Positions 13,857 through 54,676 of a stretch of 64,000 nt of DNA are shown here, piece by piece. The stretch's first letter is position 1. Every line of letters starts with the position of its first letter. A program made the translations under genes and the position numbers. Below the pieces are notes generated by a model. It saw only the letters and a list, made by a program, of their open reading frames with translations, was not told the DNA's origin and ran no database searches. Source of the DNA: Ascidiella aspersa (taxonomy: Eukaryota); the NCBI GenBank assembly GCA_963924565.1, contig OZ004614.1:3100001-3164000 (forward strand), in the 5' to 3' direction.

Positions 13857-13935
13857 AATACACCTGATGAAGCACGGTTGTGCGAAAGCTCGTCAACTTA
13901 AAAATACAATTTGTCAACAGTGTCACTTGTTTTCA
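13857..13935 (+). ncRNA. Minimal hammerhead ribozyme motif, family B (Penelope/retrozyme-type)
   Basis: CUGAUGA (13864-13870), A, stem II GCAC-GGUU-GUGC, GAAA, GC, UC. Palindromic AGCU stem III region. The 28-nt core is identical to the minus-strand copy at 54624-54651 and the downstream AATACAATTTGTC..AGTG.CACTTG is shared. Stem I is only 2 bp. Confidence 0.7.
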
Positions 13936-23265: not shown

Positions 23266-23945
23266 GGCGAGGTGTTAGTCGGGTCGGCGCCGGAACCTGA
23301 TGCGCAGTAAAACGGTTGTCATGGCGATCTAATTGCCCCAAAGTGGGTGGCCACAAATTAAGGGAGGCCATTGAAGCAAACTCGGAAAACTAGATAATTG
23401 CACTTAAGAATCAGAGTAAAATGGGACTTATTCTGCTTGTGTGCTCTAATTCTACAGTTCTGTTCCAATTCTGATTTTACGACTTTGTGCAACGCATTTT
23501 TAGTCCTCAGTCAGAACAAGAAATTTGAATTAATACTCTCTAGTCGGAACGACTTGTGTGATGACTATAAAGATTTGCGATCGCCGGCCGGTTATAAAAT
23601 TTTGTGTCGTAGTTCATAACTTGATTATTATCTTTAAACGAAGAAAATATAAATGAACATGAAACAAAACTGTAGCGGGCCTGAATAAAATGCCGCTCAA
23701 TTTAAAATTTTACGAGAATTTAGATTGGAACTGTATCCGACAACATTTTAACTTATAGAGTTTACCTTTATTAAGGAAAGAAGTCTCGGTTCAGTAGAGA
23801 TAACAATGCGGCCTAGATTTGGCCCGTGGTTTGTGGACCCCTTGTTTAGAGTCACACTATGGACGGTGGCGTAACTTTTACAATATTGCGACTTCTGCTT
23901 TTTACTGTGGTTTTTAAACGTTTTAGCAAATATTGTTGATGTGGC

Positions 23946-24079
23946 TTGATAATAAATTGCAAAGCCAAAAAGCTCGAGTAATTCGACAGCATCTTGATTA
24001 AGACGTTTCGATACGAGCTTGTATCATCTTCAGTTAAAGTGATTTACCCGACCTTTTTGGCTCTGCAATTTATTATCAA
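23946..24079 (-). ncRNA. Intact minimal hammerhead ribozyme, family A, bracketed by 38-bp inverted repeats
   Basis: Minus strand: UUAA-CUGAAGA(24033-24027)-U-GAUAC-AAGCUC-GUAUC-GAAA-CG-UC^UUAA. All core nucleotides present, 5-bp stem II, 4-bp stem I, palindromic ACGU stem III, GUC triplet with predicted cut between 24002 and 24001. Arms 23946-23983 and 24042-24079 match at 34/38 as an inverted repeat. Confidence 0.85.
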
Positions 24080-26099
24080 AAATTGTTGATGTTGAAATCT
24101 ACAAATCATTGCAGCTGTGTATACAGTTGACTTTCGCTTTTGGTAAACGATAAGCCCCAGAAAATCAAGTGGTCGCATAAACTGGTCGAAGTAAAATGAA
24201 AGTAAGTTCATTTAAATGATAGGAAGTACATTTGTAATGGGATAATTCGTATTACCCTAAAAACGAAAGTAATTGACTTATTTTGGGACACTCATGTTGT
24301 CACTGGGAACATATACGTACGTAGGAAAACAAATAAAAGAGTAAATCTAGATGTTGGTTTTAGTTTTGATGTTTAGAAAACGTCTCTAAACAAGCACCAT
24401 TATTCTACAGTTTCTTTGTATGTTTCATCACAAGTTGTTGAATTTATTTTGTAGCAACACCGAAGGCGGAATAAAGCTAAAACCTAGCCAAGTGCAAAAC
24501 AGGTTTTGTTTCTGCTTGTTTTGGTTTCGTGTTGTTTGTGTGCTTTATAACAACGTACATTCTCGTGTTATTTGTTCCTAACCAACTGTTGAAGTTAATA
24601 ATTCACCATTGACAAAAAAGTGTTATTTTGCTAGCAACCAACTAGACTTATTACAGCACAAATGACGACCGTTATTTCAACCTAAAGGCCCTGGTTATCA
24701 TTGGATAAGAAGGCCGATAAATCCAGTTATTAGTGTGATTTTAGGGGAATCATTAACTTGTGTGAATTATTGTTTCTTTGTGCACCTAAAATCCACCAAA
24801 ACGGGAGCGATGTAAAAACAGAAGAGTGTGCGAACCATATTTCTAGTAAGGCGTAAGGAAAAAACAGTAAGGAAAAAGCGGAAACAACTTGAAAAACAAG
24901 CACAACCCAAGGCTGTTGGTCTGTCGTAAATTCAAACTAAATATAATAGGAATATCAAGCCCATACACATTATGCTCCAAAACTAAACGTAACTTAAAAC
25001 TAAATGGAAAATAAAATACATAAAATTTAAATCTAAACATAGTTTTCATATTAAAAAAACGCCCTAATGTACCGTTTTCCCGAATTTTTCCACTTCCTCA
25101 AGACATGTAATTTTTTTGGCCATAAAAGTAGCCACAAAAAACGGGAAAACGTTTAAAAGCAGAGGATTCAACTTCTAGTGACGCGCAAACAGTCAGGGGC
25201 AAGGTAAAACAACTTAAACAAGCAAGTCAACAAGGGGACGAACTAGTCGTGGGCATTTAAAGCGCCCTGAAGAGCGGGTACAATGCGGTGCCAAGCGACG
25301 ATTACTACGACGGGGGGGAGGGAAGAATGTGGGCTTCTCACTGCAAATACGGGCCGATATAATCGCTGCAAAGGCCACCTCAAAAAGAGCCAGGCCCACT
25401 TTTTCAAACATGCATGTGCGCAAATTCCCTGCTTTGAAATATAGTTTTTCGTTTTATTTTTGTAATATTGTTTCAAATCCTTTGCAACGTAAACTTAAAT
25501 CAGAGTTCAATATGTATGAGCGGTGTTTGTTTTCAAGTGATTTTTTGTTTAATAATATTGTGCAGAATAATTTCAGTCGTAAATATTGCATAATCTGGAA
25601 CGTTTATTTAGAAAATCTTGCATTTTTGCCTAAGTTCGTTTTGTACGCTAATTTTGTACCGCAAAGACCTGTAATCAAGGTGTTAAAAAAGAAAACAAGG
25701 AGTAGGGCTTTTTAACAACACACATGTGCGAATTTAGTCAACTTACGCCTATATTTTAGCCATAAAATCAGTTTGCCGTCCAAATTTTCGCGGAGAAAAG
25801 GTTAATATAAGTGAGAATCAAATTCATAAAAGCACGATCATGGGGTTTAAAAATAAGGTTTAAAAAACTTTATCAGAACGATAAGTGTTCCGTCCTTTTT
25901 TTGCTCAGAAGGTTAAATTGTCGTAAGAACTGATTTGATTATAACACAAAAAACTAGAAGGACATGGGATTAGTTTTCTCTTATAGTCATGCCTGTACAA
26001 CTGTACATTTTCACCTCAAGCTTGTATTTTTGCTTTAAAATAAAGTTTTCCACGTTATTCTTTAACCGCAACGTTAACAACAGTTTTGAATCGCAAAAT

Positions 26100-36622: not shown

Positions 36623-39600
36623 AATATCGTAAGTTCGAACTTAATCGCAGGCTAGACGAAGGCATCCATTATTCAACCACAAATGGAACACAACTAAAAT
36701 TCCTAACACTATGTTTATGGTAGCTCCTTTGCTAAACAACAAAACTCCCTGCCTTTCTTAAAACGTAAAGTATAGTCATTTTTAAATGCGGTGCGAAAAT
36801 TTGGAAAAGGGAGTCAATAAATATGTGTATAAAAGATTTTGAGAAGATATTTTCCATTGTGCAATCACAAGCCAAACAGCAATAAACAAAAAGTTTAACA
36901 CAGCATGTATTCGGTGCAGAAACCTTATAGGGAAGCGCTTAGCCGGGCACACATATAGCGCAAACATTACAAAACAGTAGAAAAATTAAGAAAAAAATCT
37001 GCTTGTGGAAATCACTCGGAAATGCCATATGGAAGTCCTGACTTCAAGCTGTACGTCCCAAAAGCGTAAACTGGACTGGCGGCAGGAACCCGGAGCCAAT
37101 GGAACCTTCCAGGCCATTCAGGGCGCCGAAACGCCCGGCCAGCACCCGGAAAGACCACCTGCTCAAAAGGTGCCTTGTCTGCGCGATGCAGATAAGATAG
37201 GGTAAGTCGTCTGACACGTGTTGTTCTTTCTCGTAGCTCGTATGTGGAGCTTTGAACGGCGCGGAGAAGCCGTAATTGCGAAGTGGCTTCTTTTAACGAC
37301 CGGGCGCTTGGCTAATGACGGAAAAACGAGGTTTTGACGTTCTTTTCATTCCCACAATTGCTCCCCGTCGGGCCCTAGGACCACTTGAAACGTAAATTAC
37401 CTGGGTTCTTTGCGCGTCGCAATTTGACAGATACAGCCGCACATAAATCGGACAACACGCTTTTAAGACAATTCTCGGTTGTTTCTTGTGCTGAATCATG
37501 TATTAATAGCGATCTACCTTTTAAACGCTACACATCACCATTTAGCACTGTGTTTTTTTACGGATTTTTAAGAGTTGTGGATTTTTAAAGTGTTATGTAA
37601 GACGATTGACAACGCTCAACTCCCTCTCAAAGTTATATGTGTTTGTTTGGTTCTATGGCCCCTTACAAATACCTTCAACACTATAACCGCATACTCAACA
37701 AAAAACTCTGATTAGTTTATTAATTTTTGTACGACTTGCAAGTTTTAAGGCTATATTTGAAGGCGAGCAAACACTTAAAAGAAAAACCTAAATATCATTA
37801 CATTAAAAATTGATAAATAAAAATATTGTTAACTAGGAATTTGGTGCGAAGCTTACTGTTACACTCTTTGACGAATAGCTAATAATGAGGCCTTTTGCCC
37901 CCCCTTCCCTTAGAAGACCCCTTTGGGGGCATTTTCTGGTTCTAGAAAAACACAAAAAACGCATAAAAATTGTTTACTTGAGCAACTGTACATGCATTGC
38001 ACCCGAAGATTTTGCGAGTCAATCGTAGCTCATAATTACTTTATATGGTTTGTGGCCATTGCTTCAGGTATCAAATAACCCGTCTAGAAAGTCCTAAAAA
38101 TGTCACTATGGTTTGAGAAAACCGATCTTCGCGTGGTAATTGTTTACTTCGTAGCAATTGTAAATGCATTATACCTGAGCGTACAGCTTTAATGCGCAGC
38201 CTAACGTTTGTGTACCATTTCGTTGTCTTATCTGCGACCACTGAAACGATGCAACATCATGGAAGCCCTAATAGAGAGCTTTTCTCCGACATAAGCATTA
38301 AGTTGTGTAAACCTTACAAGCTTCGAAAAGCTAAAGTTAATACGGGACAATTTAATAGTTGTACAATCATTTTGCATGTTTTATAACTGTAGGTAGTTGT
38401 GTATTACGTTATGCACATATGTATAGGGTTTGGCGATTTGAAACGGTTTCTTGGCCATTGGTATTTCAGAAGAAACAAGGCTGTAATTATTTTTTTTTTT
38501 GAGTTCTGCACCATTAATGACGATAATTAAAAGTAAACTGTTGCTCCAGCCATAGTAATATAGACAAGAAAAAAAAGCTCCCCTGGTAATAATACCATAC
38601 CAGAGGAGCTGTTTTTTTTATTTATATTAATAGTTGCACATTTACTCTACATGCTTAATAACCGTAAGCAGGTGTGTAATACGAGTAGTTTGCTTTAGAA
38701 GCCGTTGAATACTCGGAACACTTTTCCATAATGTGTTCATATCTGTTTCGCTTTATAAAGGCATTAGTAAGAGGAATGCTGCTCAGGTTACAAATGTATT
38801 GGGCAACGCTAAAGCAGTGGGGTGATTTTTATAAAAATACCCCACCCCTCAAGATATACCTCAGAAAGGTTGCCAAATCTTTTGTGACGTTACATGACGC
38901 AAGAAGGATGCTTTGACGTAACACTAACAGTAAGCAATTCCACAGTCGATTTCCGAATTGGACTTACAAGGTTTCTATGGCATAACTTTGAAAAGGAAAA
39001 TTAGTTTATAGAACAGCACAGCGGGCCTGTTTCAATGATCTGTACACATCTGTCCAGCAAGGAGTTTCCAAAGCTTTGCAAAGGCGTACAGATTCGAGAT
39101 AGTTTCCGGGTATGGGCGAATAAGGCTATATACTGGCAGCGCGATGCCTTTATAGCTTCGGCCTATATCCTATAGTATCTATACATCGCTTCTCTTTTGA
39201 AACTTAAGACGCGTCGCACATGTTATAGAACAGGAAGCGGGTTATCCCTGCTGGTTACAGGCTTAAGTTAGATTTATAAGCACGCCAGCTTTACTAGATG
39301 TACCCATGGTAGGCTTTTATCATTTGGGACTTTGTAAACGTTTTTTGTTTTTTATTTGACTTACTAGTTTTCTTTAACTAACAACGCAAATTGATATACA
39401 CCGGGTTGGGTTTTGTAGCATATTGGTTATGGGCTGTAGACGTAGATCAAACAACAAAGTCCATACACAAGTCAAGTAGGTTGCATTTTGCGAACGCTTC
39501 GAACAAAACATTATTCATTTTCAACAAATATTATTATTTATTCGAAACGTTCACAAAATGCCACTTACTTCTGCAATGGATATAGTTGCGCAAATATGAC

Positions 39601-41732: not shown

Positions 41733-44700
41733 TTTCAAGCCTCATATACGGTTCCTGAACAGATTCCTTTAAATTTCAGAACCCAACAGATTTCTGAGAG
41801 ATGTGAAAATCGATTTCTTTAGACGCGTTTCTATTATGACACCGTAAACCTTTGGGAATATAACCTACGTGCAAAAGCTACAAATCCATACCTCCGTGTC
41901 TCAATGTAGTTTTGCTTTTAACAGGACCTTTGAAAAGTCAATGGTACATTAAACGTTACAATAATAACAGTAATAAAAACAGCTCCTCTGGTAAATAAAA
42001 ATTATATATAATTACCGTTTATTGATTAATATTTTTCCTTCTAACAACAGTTTATATAAATATTAAAATACTTTATTCTCAATGTCTTGTTAAATAAATC
42101 TTTCCATGTAACATTACTTGCTAATTTTTTTAATGTTTTTACCCTTTATTGGTTTAAATATAATGTACATTATTTTACATGGCATGACACATATGAACAT
42201 ACTAAATTTCACCTCAAAAATAACGAATTTAGCGTCAAGAAATTAAAATGCCAGAAAAAAGTGATTCAAACTGACCCTCATATATAACACTGTTCCACTA
42301 ACAGCGCCAAAAATAGAATAAAAAAAATCAACTTTAAAGTTGCCCAAAAACAGCCAAGTGATTTCATTCAGTCGAAGCAAGGGCGCTGACAGGTCTACAA
42401 ACAATAAACTGTAGCCATTCCGCCACACACAGCAAGCTTCATCAGGCCTAGCATTTACAACAGGGGAGGGAGGGGAGAAGTGTTGACAGGTTGTGCACAT
42501 CGCAGTTCAAAAACACGTTACGACTCGCTTGTTTTTGCATTCGCTGTTCACACACGTCGTTTTAGGGAAAGCGTTAACAGATTCGGATTAAAACTGCGTT
42601 AAAACATGCTTTTTTTAACGAAAAGTTTTGAAATGTCGTTGATTCCTCGTTTAAGCGTTGAAGTCAACCTTGCCTGGCGCTAAACCACAACATAACATTC
42701 TGTAAAAGCTTCGCCCTAAAAGGCCTACAGCAGATAAAAGACGTAATTTTACGTCGGTCGGTAGGTGATTGAAAGCTCTGTCAAGGGTAAAATTATAAAA
42801 GAATCGACACCGCGGTCCGCTGGGAAAAATTTTATGACTACACTATCTTAAAGTCCATGTTTGAAAGCCTTTTTTATATCCCAAAATTTCTTCATGTTAA
42901 ATTAGGACTGATATTCAACACAATGTAGTTGTATAGGTTCTCGTCCGATACTAGGGTAGAATTGCTCCTGGACCAGTATATAACGTAATGTCGGAATTTC
43001 AACAATCCAAGTTTAACCCGGCAATTTATATTTTAAGAAATATTTTTGTAATGGTAGATGAATCATGACTCAATAAATTGAACGGGACTCTTTTTATTTT
43101 GTCTTTACTCAGAAATCAGGAATAAAGGGAATAATATCGTTTTGTGCATTTATTTAATTAAACAAAATATGGTCATCGGGACAAAATACAAGGATCGGAC
43201 ATTTAGATTGCACCTCAATGGACCATATTATCTTTAAACAACTGAACTTAAAATGTGTCTCGCGAGCTGAAATGTTTACCCATTCCTCTAAAAGCCCCCG
43301 TAGAAATGTGATACCCCTATTGCATGGTGGTCGATGGGCGGACTACCCCCAAATCGCCCCAAATCCTGACAAATAACTCGCTGTCATTTCGTCTTCGCTT
43401 TATGTACAAGAGCATTAAACCGACTACAAATAGGCTCTGTTCTGTTTGATTTGGCTTACGACAAACGACTGAGAAATATTTGAGTTGAAATTGATGGGCT
43501 GAGGTTTAACCCGAATTATTATAGGGTCACGTTTGTTCTTTTTTTGCTTGGATATCGAATTTTACCAAGGCGGCATAAAATACAAGGTTGCCACACAATT
43601 ATAAGAAAAAAATTAAAAAACATAGGGTTTTTCATGGACTTTTTAATGCGCTAATCATTTCAAAGACATTTAAAGATTTAAAGACTTTGTGGCTTCAAAT
43701 CTGTAAAATTTTAACTAGGATAATATAATTGGACATTGCTGTATTTGTCTAATTAAATAACTATTTTGTTGGTCATGTAATTTTATTACGACGACAAAGA
43801 GCCTCACTACGCCACAAAAAAGATTTAAGTTCACGTAAAGCGCAATTTGTACAACTTGAAAAACTGTAAAAAACTATGGGCATTGTAACTTAGTGATACC
43901 AAGGCGGCCAAATTGATTTTTTAACTGCTGTCAAACATTATTAATATTGAGTCACAAGTGTTGTTTGTCTAACTCAAAAGCAAGGCGATCTTTCAACATT
44001 ATTTTTAATTCAAAATGGGTGACTTTTAAAAAAGTTATATTGTTTTAGACTGACTAGCTGTTATTCACAGTTCTTACTTTGCCAAAAGAAAACAAAGTTT
44101 TGTAATATTGTTAATTTTGATACCACCGCAACCATGTTTCTAGCATACAATTTTTCAACTTTTTCTGTTATACGGTTTACCAAGTTCAATCTCTATACAT
44201 TGCCACATACTCGTGTCCAAAGTTGTAAAATTCTTGCGTATTGAAGTAGCGTAACGAATTCAACCAGAGTGTATTCGCGCCCTTTAACCCGAAAGCGTAA
44301 TTTCGAAAACAGTCAACATCAGTCTGTGTTCGGGCGCAAAGATGTTGCGTTACGCAAGTTAAAAACAAAAAGAAGATCGCGTGAATTCAAGGCAACGAAG
44401 CATATGTTCGACGTACAACTCCCAAAACAACCTTGTATAGTCGAATGTTTGGACACCGCATATATATACTTGTATGTTTGTGTACTGCTGGATACCGTTA
44501 ATAGTGCCAGTAGACCAATGCAGCTAGATTTTAACACACTAGTTATTATATTTAAAACACACTAGTTATTATACCGTAAAAGCAAGACTGTTTAAGGGTA
44601 TAGTGTTTAAGGTTGTTTATATGGTTAGGTTCCTAAACATTTTGGACTTTGAGAGATGGTTTGTCATCATTAGATAATTCTATTTTTTGACCGTTTGAAA

Positions 44701-46509: not shown

Positions 46510-46755
46510 AATTGCGTTCCACCTTTGGTAAGAAAGGTTTGAATTGATTTCACACACATTAACTGATGATACAAAATAAGTTCGTTACGCACTTGTATCA
46601 TCATCAGTTAATGCGACCGAAATACATTCAAACCTCACTAAAAAGGTTGAATGCAATTGTGTGTTATTATGTGAGGCGTGAATAGCTTCCTGTCACATTA
46701 ACTGAAGATAAATACAATTTCGTATCAAAACGTCTTTATCAAAAAGCTGTAGATC
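46510..46755. ncRNA. Cluster of three decayed family A hammerhead motifs, two forming a ~65-bp inverted repeat
   Basis: Plus CATTAACTGATGATACAA (46557-46574, truncated). Minus CATTAA-CTGATGA-T-GATAC-AAGTGC-GTAAC-GAA (46613-46581). Plus CACATTAA-CTGAAGA-TAAATAC-AATTTC-GTATC-AAAA-CGTC-TTTATCAAAAAGCTGTAGA (46694-46753). IR arms 46510-46574 / 46593-46658. Confidence 0.75.
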
Positions 46756-47600
46756 TATTTTTCTCTGACATTCACTTTTAAGCTACATTACAGACCTGTG
46801 CATAATGTACCTAAATAATGCCTAGTTTTGACAAATGCAAATACGCGAGACGTGCTTTGTAGGTAATTACCCTGAACGGGGTAATTTTGCGTGATTAAAG
46901 GGTGATTTAGACATTTTTTTTTCTGTTTGGTTTTCTGTAACATTAGCCAACCTATTTTCATGGTGGGGATATTTAAATTTAGTTTGTTTTTTTTTTTAAA
47001 AAAAGGGGTAATAAAACTAAGTTTTTTTAGGAAGGAAAATATTAAGCAGTTTGAGAAATACGATTGGTGTGAGAACAAAAAAACTTAAAAAATGAAATAT
47101 TTTTACAATAGTTTTTGGGAGGTTAGCTAAAAAGATAAAAAAGGTTAACTGAAAAGTCAAAAAGGTGATGTTGGTTAAATTTTTAAAAAGAAGTTTACTA
47201 AAACGTCAAAAAGACTTTTTTTTTCTGTAAAAAAATAAATTAAATCGAAAACATTTCGCGAGCATGCTTATCAATTAAACTTATCAAACGCTAGTGAGTC
47301 GACAGCAATAAAGAAGGGCTAAATACAACGATCAATGCACTATTCTAACCCAGGAAAGTTACAGAGCAGAGCAAGCCACAGAACACCGGAGAATCGTCAC
47401 GTCGCTAAAAGTGCACTGACTCAGGTGCCCGGTTCCGCTGCGCGTGTGTGCCTCAGCTTATGCGCGCGTGTTCTCGTGCGTGCGTGTGCGTGTGCAGGTC
47501 ATTTCCTCCTGTTGCAAAAGTGCCTTGGAAGAGGTGCGAAGTTGTGCAGATAGCTGTGGGAGGTTCTGGGTTATGTGAGAACGTTTTCAAAAGCTTAGAT

Positions 47601-52603: not shown

Positions 52604-54567
52604 GTAAGTTTGTCGGAGGTTGGAATGTTTTAATTATAAAAGTTTTAAGGCAGCGTTTCTTATTCTGTGTGCCACGGGCAAACGCAAAACATATTCCAAA
52701 AAAATGGACATATATATTTTGAGCATTTTTTTTTATTATTTTATTTCGGCTTAGCAGTGTTTTTTTATTTCGGCTTAGCAGTGGTGACTTTATTGAAAGT
52801 TTTTAACCTAACCACGATTCAAGGTGTTGATGCTTGATTTAAATTAATTTAACTTTGTTTCTCTGTACGGTTAGTTGGGGGACTACTATAACATAAAAGT
52901 ACTAAATCATTAAGTGAACTATATATAATACCCAGTTTTTCTTTAGTCTTGGTATATTCATCAAAGTATTTTATCAAAATCTCCTAAATAAGGTTTGAAT
53001 CTGACAGAGGTGAGAGACAAACACGAAATGTAAACACATTGTTTCGCTCTAGTATTAATAAAGCTTTGTGTTTGCCAAGCGAAATTATACGCTGCCAAAA
53101 GTTGCCAGTTAAGACGTATTTCGACGATGCTAACACGTTTACGTTCGAGCAAACAAAGGGCAATTTTCAGTTGCCTTGGAAAGTAAAGTTTGCTGCGCGT
53201 CTTAACTTACTTCAAGACAGATTAACTTGACATGTAAATGGCTCCCTGTGGATATATCTTATCGAGTTTAAATAAGATCCCACTTTTTTCTTAGGGTAAC
53301 CTGCTTTTTTTTATGGGAGGGCGGTATACAATGAAAGACAAATACAATTAATATCTAACAAACCTGGGCCCATATATTAAACTTACCCATAACCAACATA
53401 ACAAACAGAAAGTAAAAAGATGAACACTGAACGCGTTAACTGTTAACCAGAGCATTTTCATTTTGCTGTTATTAGCTCACGTGTCACATGGCATAGAAAC
53501 TAGATGGTGAAGATTACATTTCGTCGAACCGGCCATCGCGAATGTCTATATCAATCGAGTTTCGATCGATTTCATTTCGACAATACAATATGCCGTTTCA
53601 TTGCGCACAATGGCCTACACACACTATTAAAATGAAAACCTACAACGTTTTTGTATGGTGTCTATTGAAGCTAAACGTTTTGCAAAAAAAAATCGAAATC
53701 GAGTCTTTCCTTTACTAAATTGTAAAATGGAGAAATAAATATATTTAGTCATCATCATAAAAAACGACCAAAGGTATAAAACACAATCGTCCAATATAAA
53801 ACGTTTAATTTTTGCTGCTTTTTATTAAGGAATTAGAGATAATGTAAATTTAACATTGTCGGGTATTTTATTATACGTATTAAGAATATCAAAGTAGGTA
53901 GCATTTTAAACGTTCGTAATATATGTTTATTAACGTACCGGTACACGAACTACGTCTACTAAAACCTCCAACCATTATGTTCCAAAGTCTATTTATTGAG
54001 TATGATAAAATAACATGATTTATAGCAGCCCACTGGTATACTAGACATTGTAAATATACCTTCTAACAAACCACCAATGAAAAAACTAAATCACTGACAA
54101 AATATACAGTAACCGCAACCCCGTCAAGATTGATTTTGTTTTTCTACCCAATAAAGCTAAAATGAACAACTAAAATAACAAAAAAAAAAACAGTTAACCT
54201 CCTTATGGTCAATTATCATTGTCCGATAATATATCCCAAACATGGTAAACACTTTACAGGGCTGATTTATGAATCGATATAACTATTATTAACTGCTTCT
54301 TAGTCTTGTCTACACTGCTTGAAAAATCAATCCACTTCGAGGCAATTCAAAATCGATACATCACGTGCGCCACGAAATGCGGCTTCCTTTATGAATAATT
54401 ATACAAATATTCAGCAAGCAACAGTACAAAGAGACGAAAACGAGGCCAATTTATGTGGAAAATTTCACCATGAATATTTGACGTTCCCTCTATTTTTTTT
54501 CAAATAAAAAACATTAATAAGGAAAAAGATTTGAACTTATTTTGTGGCCTAAAATTAACTTGACTTT

Positions 54568-54676
54568 TAAATAGAGGAATCAAGTGGCACTATATAAAGA
54601 CAAATTGTATTGAGTTATCGGCAAGCTTTCGCACAACCGTGCTTCATCAGGACAAAGTATCTGATTCCTCTATTTA
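54568..54676 (-). ncRNA. Minimal hammerhead ribozyme, family B, bracketed by a perfect 15-bp inverted repeat (intronic, antisense)
   Basis: Minus strand: UUGUC-CUGAUGA(54650-54644)-A-GCAC-GGUU-GUGC-GAAA-GC-UU^GCCGA. Arms TAAATAGAGGAATCA (54568-54582) / TGATTCCTCTATTTA (54662-54676). Stem I has one mismatch and one GU pair. Confidence 0.75.

What the first reader, a model, noticed from the sequence alone, without database searches (positions are those of the whole stretch)
23946..24079. Hammerhead ribozyme cassette at the tip of a copy-specific inverted repeat: a candidate undescribed mini-element architecture
Seen: a ~60-nt cassette (CAC[A/T]TTAA-CTGA[A/T]GA-T-GATAC-loop-GTATC-GAAA-CGTC-TT[A/T]ATCAA.A.GCTGT.GA) holding a complete minimal hammerhead sits between 38-bp inverted arms. 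The 134-nt unit could fold as one rod in which the arms clamp and extend the weak 4-bp stem I. The same cassette recurs at 46.6-46.7 kb, where similarity stops at the cassette edge and the inverted arms are a different sequence. An unrelated hammerhead (family B, 54568-54676) has the same arm-core-arm layout. Established: minimal type I hammerheads with a very short palindromic stem III occur in Penelope-like element pLTRs and metazoan non-LTR retrozymes and are thought to cleave as dimers; Penelope insertions often have inverted ends. Inference: these are non-autonomous ribozyme cassettes whose insertion copies flanking DNA in inverted orientation, or which survive only where a hairpin clamp forms. 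No RT or GIY-YIG ORF is visible in the window.
Basis: partly seen in the sequence, partly recalled or inferred. Interest (0 to 1): 0.85.

Follow-up and report, generated by a model that had tools for sequence, protein, structure and literature searches.

The report
Truncated Penelope retroelement tail with hammerhead
The 134-base hairpin is an ordinary, heavily shortened insertion of a Penelope-like retrotransposon: its ribozyme-bearing 3' tail sits beside a short inverted copy of that same tail, a layout already described for this element class.

Summary
The sequence is as described. A complete minimal hammerhead lies on the minus strand (24037-23998, predicted cut 24002|24001) between 39-nt inverted arms. 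The arms are not copy-specific and are not copied flanking DNA. The 3' arm is the element's own tail, present in nearly all of 30 sampled copies. A 26-nt tail probe that overlaps the first 17 nt of the arm matches 2,201 genomic sites. The 5' arm is an inverted, 5'-truncated copy of that tail. An 11-bp target-site duplication (23932-23942 / 24082-24092) brackets the composite, so it is one insertion.

Longer copies continue upstream into an ORF with a reverse transcriptase domain, followed by a GIY-YIG-like block. That makes it a Penelope-like element (PLE), with the hammerhead about 100 nt past the stop codon. Variable 5' truncation, adjacent inverted truncated copies, an optional ~30-nt tail extension and minimal hammerheads without loop 3 are all published PLE features.

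"Family B" is the tail of a second PLE family. The 46.7-kb copy is an older, degenerate relative whose similarity runs through the whole tail.

One loose end remains: about 40% of copies begin exactly at the hammerhead's 5' edge, just downstream of a TATA/TCAGT-like pair.

Other first readers flagged PLE hairpins elsewhere in this genome.

The parts
23943..24042 (-). 5'-truncated copy of a Penelope-like element: hammerhead plus 3' tail. It corresponds to reference L035:600-1960 positions 1197-1300. The last few bases may overlap the target-site duplication.
   Evidence: BLASTN to the L035 reference: 94.2% over 104 nt. The same segment is shared by 30 genomic copies.
23998..24037 (-). Minimal hammerhead. 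Helix I 5' strand 24037-24034; CUGAAGA 24033-24027; bulged U 24026; helix II with loop 24025-24010; GAAA 24009-24006; C15.2-G16.2-U16.1-C17 24005-24002; predicted cut between 24002 and 24001; helix I 3' strand 24001-23998.
   Evidence: Direct reading. Descriptor scan: 1 hit in the window against 0 in 200 simulated sequences. The 32-nt core occurs 224 times exactly and 1,788 times with up to 3 mismatches in the genome; the reversed control gives 0.
24041..24079 (+). Inverted, 5'-truncated copy of the element's tail only (reference positions 1255-1293).
   Evidence: BLASTN: 92.3% over 39 nt in opposite orientation. Inverted repeat I1.
23946..23984 (-). Tail segment of the direct copy that pairs with the inverted copy.
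   Evidence: The same tail sequence is seen in nearly all of 30 sampled copies. A 26-nt tail probe that overlaps its first 17 nt occurs 2,201 times.
23932..23942 (.). Target-site duplication, copy 1 (ACATCAACAAT read on the minus strand).
   Evidence: Direct repeat D5; flank comparison.
24082..24092 (.). Target-site duplication, copy 2.
46692..46811 (+). Older, degenerate copy of the same or a sister family: hammerhead remnant plus full tail including the optional extension. The core is inactivated (GAAA to AAAA).
   Evidence: BLASTN: 77.5% over reference positions 1196-1323; sequence.
46581..46645 (-). Inverted fragment (reference positions 1167-1232) next to the 46.7-kb copy. It is part of a head-to-head remnant at 46540-46620.
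   Evidence: BLASTN: 76%; sequence.
54565..54660 (-). Family B: hammerhead-bearing tail of a second Penelope-like family. An inverted partial tail copy lies immediately upstream, at 54661 and above.
   Evidence: About 90% identity to segments lying about 170 nt downstream of RVT_1 + GIY-YIG ORFs in L063-L074. 1,696 first-look candidates in the genome.

Best explanation
The unit is one dead-on-arrival insertion of an endonuclease-encoding Penelope-like retroelement (PLE).

Shown:
- The cassette and the 3' arm are the last ~100 nt of a PLE whose longer copies carry an RT ORF followed by a GIY-YIG-like block. The minimal hammerhead starts about 100 nt after the stop codon.
- The 5' arm is a 39-nt inverted copy of the same tail.
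- An 11-bp target-site duplication flanks the composite.
- Across the genome such pairs always have their heads together and their tails facing the flanking DNA.

Inferred:
- The element's enzyme nicked both strands of the target, and both 3' ends primed reverse transcription at the tail's internal start site. This is the behaviour reported for an Anolis PLE in vitro.
- One cDNA ran about 100 nt, to the 5' edge of the hammerhead. The other aborted after 39 nt. The two were then joined head to head.
- The hammerhead belongs to the source element's RNA, where it can be active only as a dimer because it has no loop 3. In this fragment it has no role, and the hairpin is a by-product of insertion rather than a clamp for helix I.
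For: - Arms shared: nearly all of 30 sampled copies carry the tail sequence. A 26-nt tail probe overlapping the first 17 nt of the arm has 2,201 matches.
- Coding partner, RT: the L043 ORF (399 aa) hits RVT_1 at 37.7 bits, above the cut-off.
- Coding partner, endonuclease: the L051 ORF aligns collinearly with the RT C-terminus (E=1e-5) and with the Pfam-positive GIY-YIG block (E=2e-4) of the L063 ORF. The ORF ends at L035:1706, and the hammerhead starts at about L035:1805.
- Variable 5' truncation, and two alternative 3' ends about 30 nt apart (reference positions ~1293 and ~1323).
- Adjacent inverted 5'-truncated copies in 16-18 of 30 loci, with variable inner junctions.
- Direct repeats of 8-14 bp flank the composites.
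- 14 of 14 close pairs of tail probes, and 3 of 3 pairs of cores, lie in '- then +' order.
- Hammerhead and tail are 96% identical between two subfamily consensuses, against 69% for the 3' UTR before them and 90% for the ORF end.
- Literature: min-HHRs in PLE repeats, with motifs on opposite strands 100-700 bp apart (PMC4209133). An inverted 5'-truncated copy at the 5' end and a 30-40-bp tail (PMC8557442). Cleavage and extension of both strands, and two RT start sites that define the tail (PMC11167929).
Against: - Pfam's GIY-YIG model does not hit this family's ORF directly. The endonuclease assignment rests on a pairwise alignment and the visible Y-x10-YIG motif.
- Self-cleavage is untested. 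The double-hammerhead fold scores only -8.1 kcal/mol, against -32.7 for the unconstrained dimer.
- No RNA data could be obtained.
- The two-ended priming step is taken from another PLE's biochemistry and is not shown here.
Confidence: 0.93

Rival explanations
1. This is an undescribed non-autonomous ribozyme cassette that copies flanking DNA in inverted orientation on insertion, or that survives only where copy-specific arms clamp and extend helix I.
For: The window copy does fold as a rod (-59.8 kcal/mol, z = -10.4). Two hammerhead families in the window show an arm-core-arm layout.
Against: - Both arms are element sequence shared genome-wide.
- The target-site duplication lies outside both arms.
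- Inner junctions differ between copies, and many copies have no inverted partner.
- The predicted fold does not form hammerhead helix I.
- Any inverted repeat gives such a z-score.
Confidence: 0.02
2. A MITE or other DNA transposon with terminal inverted repeats that happens to carry a hammerhead-like sequence.
For: It has terminal inverted sequence plus a flanking direct repeat.
Against: - Most copies continue unidirectionally upstream into an RT-encoding ORF, with variable 5' ends.
- The inverted part varies in length from about 39 to more than 350 nt and is absent in about 40% of copies.
- Flanking repeats vary from 8 to 14 bp.
- There are two alternative 3' ends.
Confidence: 0.02
3. The ~100-130-nt 'hammerhead + tail' units are not random truncations. 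They are full-length cDNAs of short RNAs that start at a promoter inside the PLE tail, which makes them a retrozyme-like non-autonomous offshoot mobilised by the PLE enzyme.
For: - 5' boundaries cluster at the hammerhead's 5' edge. Ten of 30 loci start at reference positions 1193-1199.
- Probe counts fall from 1,555 to 889 within 8 nt, compared with 2,201 to 1,555 over the preceding ~48 nt.
- A TATAAG lies 26-27 nt before a TCAGTC, conserved in both subfamilies.
- A 2026 preprint derives vertebrate non-LTR retrozymes from PLE pLTRs.
Against: - No transcript data are available.
- The three probes differ in intrinsic conservation.
- Reverse transcriptase stalling or template switching just past the structured hammerhead would give the same step.
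- Mini copies lack the putative promoter and so cannot propagate themselves.
- This rival is compatible with the best explanation rather than exclusive of it.
Confidence: 0.3

Closest known systems
Minimal hammerheads (min-HHR) of metazoan Penelope-like elements (Cervera & de la Pena 2014, PMC4209133)
   Same: - CUGANGA and GAAA boxes.
- No loop 3, with a palindromic ACGU for a dimeric helix III.
[quoted passage not shown]
- A G10.1-C11.1 pair.
- Helix I of 4-5 bp.
- Thousands of mostly solitary copies per genome, some paired on opposite strands 100-700 bp apart.
- Location in the terminal repeats of RT + GIY-YIG elements.
   Different: Nothing structural. Helix II is 5 bp here, against 7-8 bp in the Schistosoma families. 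This particular family's sequence is probably undescribed.
Canonical EN+ PLE insertion architecture (Evgen'ev & Arkhipova 2005; Craig et al. 2021, PMC8557442; PAc biochemistry, PMC11167929)
   Same: - High 5' truncation.
- An inverted 5'-truncated copy abutting the 5' end.
- An optional 30-40-bp tail, often at one end only.
- A single target duplication around the composite.
   Different: The window copy is an extreme case, about 100 nt plus 39 nt, so that only the hammerhead and tail remain. Direct pLTR tandems were not examined here.
Non-LTR retrozymes of animals (Cervera & de la Pena 2020; Li et al. 2026 preprint)
   Same: Short non-coding units carrying a type I hammerhead with a weak helix III, related to PLE pLTRs.
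   Different: Retrozymes are head-to-tail tandem arrays that yield circular RNAs. Here the copies are dispersed singletons or head-to-head pairs, with no tandem arrays among the 60 loci sampled for this family.
MITEs
   Same: Short, non-coding, with inverted ends and flanking direct repeats.
   Different: The inverted part is a variable-length by-product, not a fixed terminal repeat. The family has a retroelement master with RT.

Membership tests
Penelope-like element (EN+) | Reverse transcriptase ORF | tested here: met
   L043:2-1198 (399 aa) hits RVT_1 at 37.7 bits (cut-off 29.6), E=2.3e-9. The ORF is contiguous with the tail in L035, L043 and L051.
Penelope-like element (EN+) | GIY-YIG endonuclease C-terminal to the RT | tested here: met
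   Indirect evidence. There is no direct Pfam hit. The L051 ORF residues 209-277 align (E=2e-4) with residues 385-459 of the L063 ORF, which is where PF01541 scores 31.5 bits. BLASTP to the GIY-YIG ORFs in L090 and L075 gives E=3e-6 and 1e-5. A VVY...YIGQT...R...EH motif is visible.
Penelope-like element (EN+) | Variable 5' truncation with a fixed 3' end | tested here: met
   5' starts range from reference position 846 to 1199. 3' ends fall at about 1293 or about 1323.
Penelope-like element (EN+) | Optional 30-40-bp tail extension | tested here: met
   Two 3' termini lie about 30 nt apart. In several composites the extension is present on one side only.
Penelope-like element (EN+) | Inverted 5'-truncated copy adjacent to the 5' end | tested here: met
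   Seen in 16-18 of 30 loci. 14 of 14 close probe pairs are head to head.
Penelope-like element (EN+) | Direct pseudo-LTRs (partial tandem) | not tested
min-HHR (PLE hammerhead) | Catalytic boxes CUGANGA ... GAAA ... U-H | tested here: met
   Window 24033-24002, minus strand.
min-HHR (PLE hammerhead) | No loop 3, palindromic positions 15.2-16.2, bulge between 9 and 10.1, G10.1-C11.1 pair, helix I of 4-5 bp | tested here: met
   GAAA-CG-UC; bulged U at 24026; G24025 pairs with C24010; helix I is 4 bp in the window copy and 5 bp in the majority type.
min-HHR (PLE hammerhead) | Self-cleavage (as a dimer) | not testable with these tools
   Energy evaluation only: the double-hammerhead fold scores -8.1 kcal/mol, against -32.7 for the alternative. 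Published min-HHRs cleave poorly in vitro.
Rfam hammerhead families (Hammerhead_1 and the other Rfam hammerhead models) | Match to the covariance model | tested here: not met
   No hit at the gathering threshold or at E<=10. These models require a closed helix III, which min-HHRs lack.
MITE | Fixed terminal inverted repeats present in all copies | tested here: not met
   The inverted segment varies in length or is absent.
Non-LTR retrozyme | Head-to-tail tandem arrays of hammerhead units | tested here: not met
   No tandem array appears in the window or in the 60 loci sampled for this family. Pairs are inverted.

The most novel reading that the evidence does not exclude
The PLE tail carries its own TATA + TCAGT-type start site immediately 5' of the hammerhead. 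About 40% of the family's roughly 1,500-2,200 copies would then be full-length cDNAs of short tail-initiated RNAs with the ribozyme at their extreme 5' end. That would be an invertebrate, dispersed (non-tandem) counterpart of the step by which PLE repeats give rise to retrozyme-like non-autonomous units.
Probability: 0.25. Interest if true: 0.4.

Novelty: new member of a known kind. Interest (0 to 1): 0.15.

Why it matters
It matters little beyond annotation. These hairpins with embedded hammerhead cores should be masked as Penelope-like fragments. They should not be read as new ribozyme elements, microRNA-like hairpins (Rfam gives weak miRNA-model hits here) or MITEs.

The genome offers a clean natural data set for how PLEs integrate: roughly 1,800 cores, strictly head-to-head pairs, and target duplications around the composites. 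That pattern agrees with two-ended target-primed reverse transcription.

The sharp 5' boundary at the ribozyme edge is a small, testable lead on where PLE transcripts start.

Tried and rejected
- Rfam at the gathering threshold and at E<=10 gave no hammerhead hit, only weak miRNA-model hits caused by the hairpin.
- The GIY-YIG loci first fetched (L061-L090) do not contain family A. They turned out to carry family B.
- Pfam on the family-A endonuclease ORF gave no GIY-YIG hit. Pairwise comparison was used instead.
- Further genome loci could not be cut. I did not try another tool for the same letters, so full-length copies and pLTRs were not examined.
- My first dimer-structure evaluation was mis-specified, with crossing pairs. 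It was redone correctly.
- A type III reading that uses the upstream GUC at the 5'-boundary hotspot was considered and rejected. Only 7 nt separate it from CUGAAGA, which is too short for a helix I hairpin.
- The bacterial promoter/terminator scan was not used, as it is irrelevant to a eukaryote.

Full report
**What is there**

The window is G000:C8:3100001-3164000, from a 308.6-Mb eukaryotic assembly. At 23946-24079 there are two 39-nt arms, 90% complementary and 56 nt apart.

Read on the minus strand, the centre holds these parts:
- Helix I 5' strand: UUAA, 24037-24034
- CUGAAGA: 24033-24027
- Bulged U: 24026
- Helix II: GAUAC / GUAUC with loop AAGCUC, 24025-24010
- GAAA: 24009-24006
- C-G-U-C: 24005-24002
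- Helix I 3' strand: UUAA, 24001-23998

There is no loop 3. The ACGU is palindromic, so helix III can form only between two molecules.

A descriptor that encodes these features finds exactly this one site in the 64-kb window and none in 200 simulated sequences. Rfam's hammerhead models do not report it, even at E<=10. That is expected, because they need a closed helix III.

**The arms are not copy-specific**

The 71-nt core has 1,906 first-look candidates in the genome. The 32-nt catalytic centre occurs 224 times exactly and 1,788 times with up to 3 mismatches. The reversed control pattern gives 0.

I extracted 30 copies with their flanks. In nearly all of them the sequence 3' of the cassette is the same as the window's 3' arm, and it often continues about 30 nt further. 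A 26-nt probe in that tail, overlapping the first 17 nt of the arm, matches 2,201 sites.

The window's other arm is the reverse complement of that same tail. It corresponds to reference positions 1255-1293 of L035:600-1960, at 92% identity over 39 nt. The direct copy covers positions 1197-1300 at 94%.

An 11-bp direct repeat, ACATCAACAAT, lies just outside both arms at 23932-23942 and 24082-24092. The pair therefore went in as one insertion. Neither arm is copied target DNA.

**What the element is**

Copies extend upstream to different lengths. The findings in the longer ones are:
- In L035 an ORF ends at 1706, and the hammerhead begins near 1805.
- The L043 ORF (399 aa) contains RVT_1 above Pfam's cut-off.
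- Pfam does not detect GIY-YIG in this family directly.
- The 309-aa L051 ORF aligns collinearly with another ORF from this genome, L063, which has both RVT_1 and GIY-YIG above cut-off. One block matches the RT C-terminus (E=1e-5). A second matches exactly the GIY-YIG stretch (E=2e-4).
- The motif VVYKLSCSCGASYIGQT...R...EH is visible.

RT followed by a C-terminal GIY-YIG domain is the canonical architecture of endonuclease-encoding Penelope-like elements. From my own knowledge, YGLPKIHK and RYVDD-type motifs like those in the L043 ORF are typical of PLE reverse transcriptases.

**Insertion anatomy across copies**

In the 30 core-selected loci:
- 5' starts range from reference position 846 to 1199.
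- 3' ends fall at two positions about 30 nt apart, near 1293 and 1323.
- 16-18 loci carry an inverted, 5'-truncated copy abutting the 5' end. Its outer end is again one of the two canonical termini, and its inner junction varies from 938 to 1277.
- Direct repeats of 8-14 bp flank several composites: L003, L007, L015, L019, L021 and L028, plus the window copy.

Among the first 100 exact tail-probe matches there are 14 close pairs. All 14 are in '- then +' order, meaning heads together and tails outward. The same holds for 3 of 3 core pairs.

These are the published PLE hallmarks:
- High 5' truncation, an inverted 5'-truncated copy at the 5' end, and a 30-40-bp tail often present at one end only (PMC8557442).
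- A tail that corresponds to two adjacent internal RT start sites, and an enzyme that cleaves and extends both target strands (PMC11167929).
- Minimal hammerheads in the repeats, mostly as solitary truncated copies, sometimes paired on opposite strands 100-700 bp apart (PMC4209133).

**Mechanism**

Shown: one insertion event, tails outward, and variable inner junctions.

Inferred: both nicked target ends primed cDNA synthesis at the tail's start site. One cDNA reached the 5' edge of the hammerhead, about 100 nt. The other stopped after 39 nt. The two were joined head to head.

The hairpin is therefore a by-product. In the minimum-free-energy fold of the 134-nt RNA the arms and helix II form, but hammerhead helix I does not. 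Any inverted repeat would give a comparable z-score.

The double-hammerhead conformation scores -8.1 kcal/mol in the majority-type copy and -6.3 in the window copy. Unconstrained dimers score -32.7 and -26.3. That is in line with the weak in vitro activity reported for min-HHRs. Cleavage here is unproven.

There is evidence of constraint on the 3' module. Between two subfamily consensuses the hammerhead is 96% identical, the tail 96% and the optional tail 93%. The ORF end is 90%, and the 3' UTR preceding the hammerhead is 69%.

At 46692-46811 similarity to the family runs at 77.5% through the whole tail, including the optional extension. It does not stop at the cassette edge. Its core is dead (GAAA to AAAA) and helix II is damaged. 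An inverted fragment at 46581-46645 and a head-to-head remnant at 46540-46620 lie next to it.

Family B (54565-54660, minus strand; also 13863-13932) is about 90% identical to segments that lie about 170 nt downstream of the RVT_1 + GIY-YIG ORFs of L063-L074, often with an inverted partner. It has 1,696 first-look candidates. It is the tail of a second PLE family, which explains why it shows the same layout. In the window's family-B copy helix I is degraded. In L063 it is 5-6 bp.

No RT or EN coding sequence lies in the window.

**Loose end**

5' boundaries pile up just 5' of the hammerhead:
- Ten of 30 loci start at reference positions 1193-1199.
- Tail probe (about 1246-1271): 2,201 matches.
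- Hammerhead 5'-edge probe (about 1198-1223): 1,555 matches.
- The same probe shifted 8 nt upstream: 889 matches.

In both subfamilies a TATAAG lies 26-27 nt before a TCAGTC at that boundary. This could be a transcription start inside the tail, or a point where reverse transcriptase stops or switches template. RNA data could not be obtained.

**Limits**

After no further genome loci could be cut. Full-length copies, direct pLTRs and clade placement were therefore not examined.

**Verdict**

This is a real minimal hammerhead in an ordinary, extremely truncated Penelope-like insertion. The proposed new architecture is not supported, and interest is low. Two first-reader notes on other parts of this genome (s1-790953, s1-802395) independently describe Penelope-like hairpins with minimal hammerheads, and one mentions a TATA box.

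Noticed in passing
Genome-wide; in the window at 24042 (minus strand) and 46692 (plus strand): 5' ends of family-A copies cluster at the 5' edge of the hammerhead. Probe counts run 2,201, then 1,555, then 889, and the last drop happens within 8 nt. The boundary lies just downstream of a conserved TATAAG (26-27 nt upstream) and a TCAGTC. This may be an internal start site or a stop point for reverse transcriptase.
   Followed up: partly
window 54565-54676 and 13863-13932; L063:1180-1275: The family B hammerhead is the 3' tail of a second Penelope-like family whose ORF has RVT_1 and GIY-YIG above Pfam cut-offs. The window's 54.6-kb copy has a degraded helix I, whereas the L063 copy has 5-6 bp.
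   Followed up: partly
window 46533-46811: A cluster of three degenerate hammerhead-tail fragments. There is a head-to-head remnant at 46540-46620 (a CUGAUGA variant), an inverted piece at 46581-46645, and a direct copy at 46692-46811 with GAAA changed to AAAA.
   Followed up: partly
Genome-wide: Every closely spaced pair of family-A tails or cores in the listed matches is oriented heads together and tails outward (14 of 14 and 3 of 3). No tail-to-tail pairs were seen.
   Followed up: partly
window 38557-38642: A near-perfect ~70-nt hairpin gives weak hits to the mir-994 and mir-3660 models on both strands (E about 0.02-0.03, far below gathering). It is probably another inverted-repeat relic rather than a miRNA.
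   Followed up: no
window 43996-44041 (minus strand): A weak match to the histone 3' UTR stem-loop model: 21.6 bits against a gathering score of 34, E=0.2.
   Followed up: no
L004:1880-1930 (G000:C7): At the 5' end of this longer copy, a short piece of the ORF region is present in inverted orientation. This is another instance of head-to-head joining, here inside the coding part.
   Followed up: no
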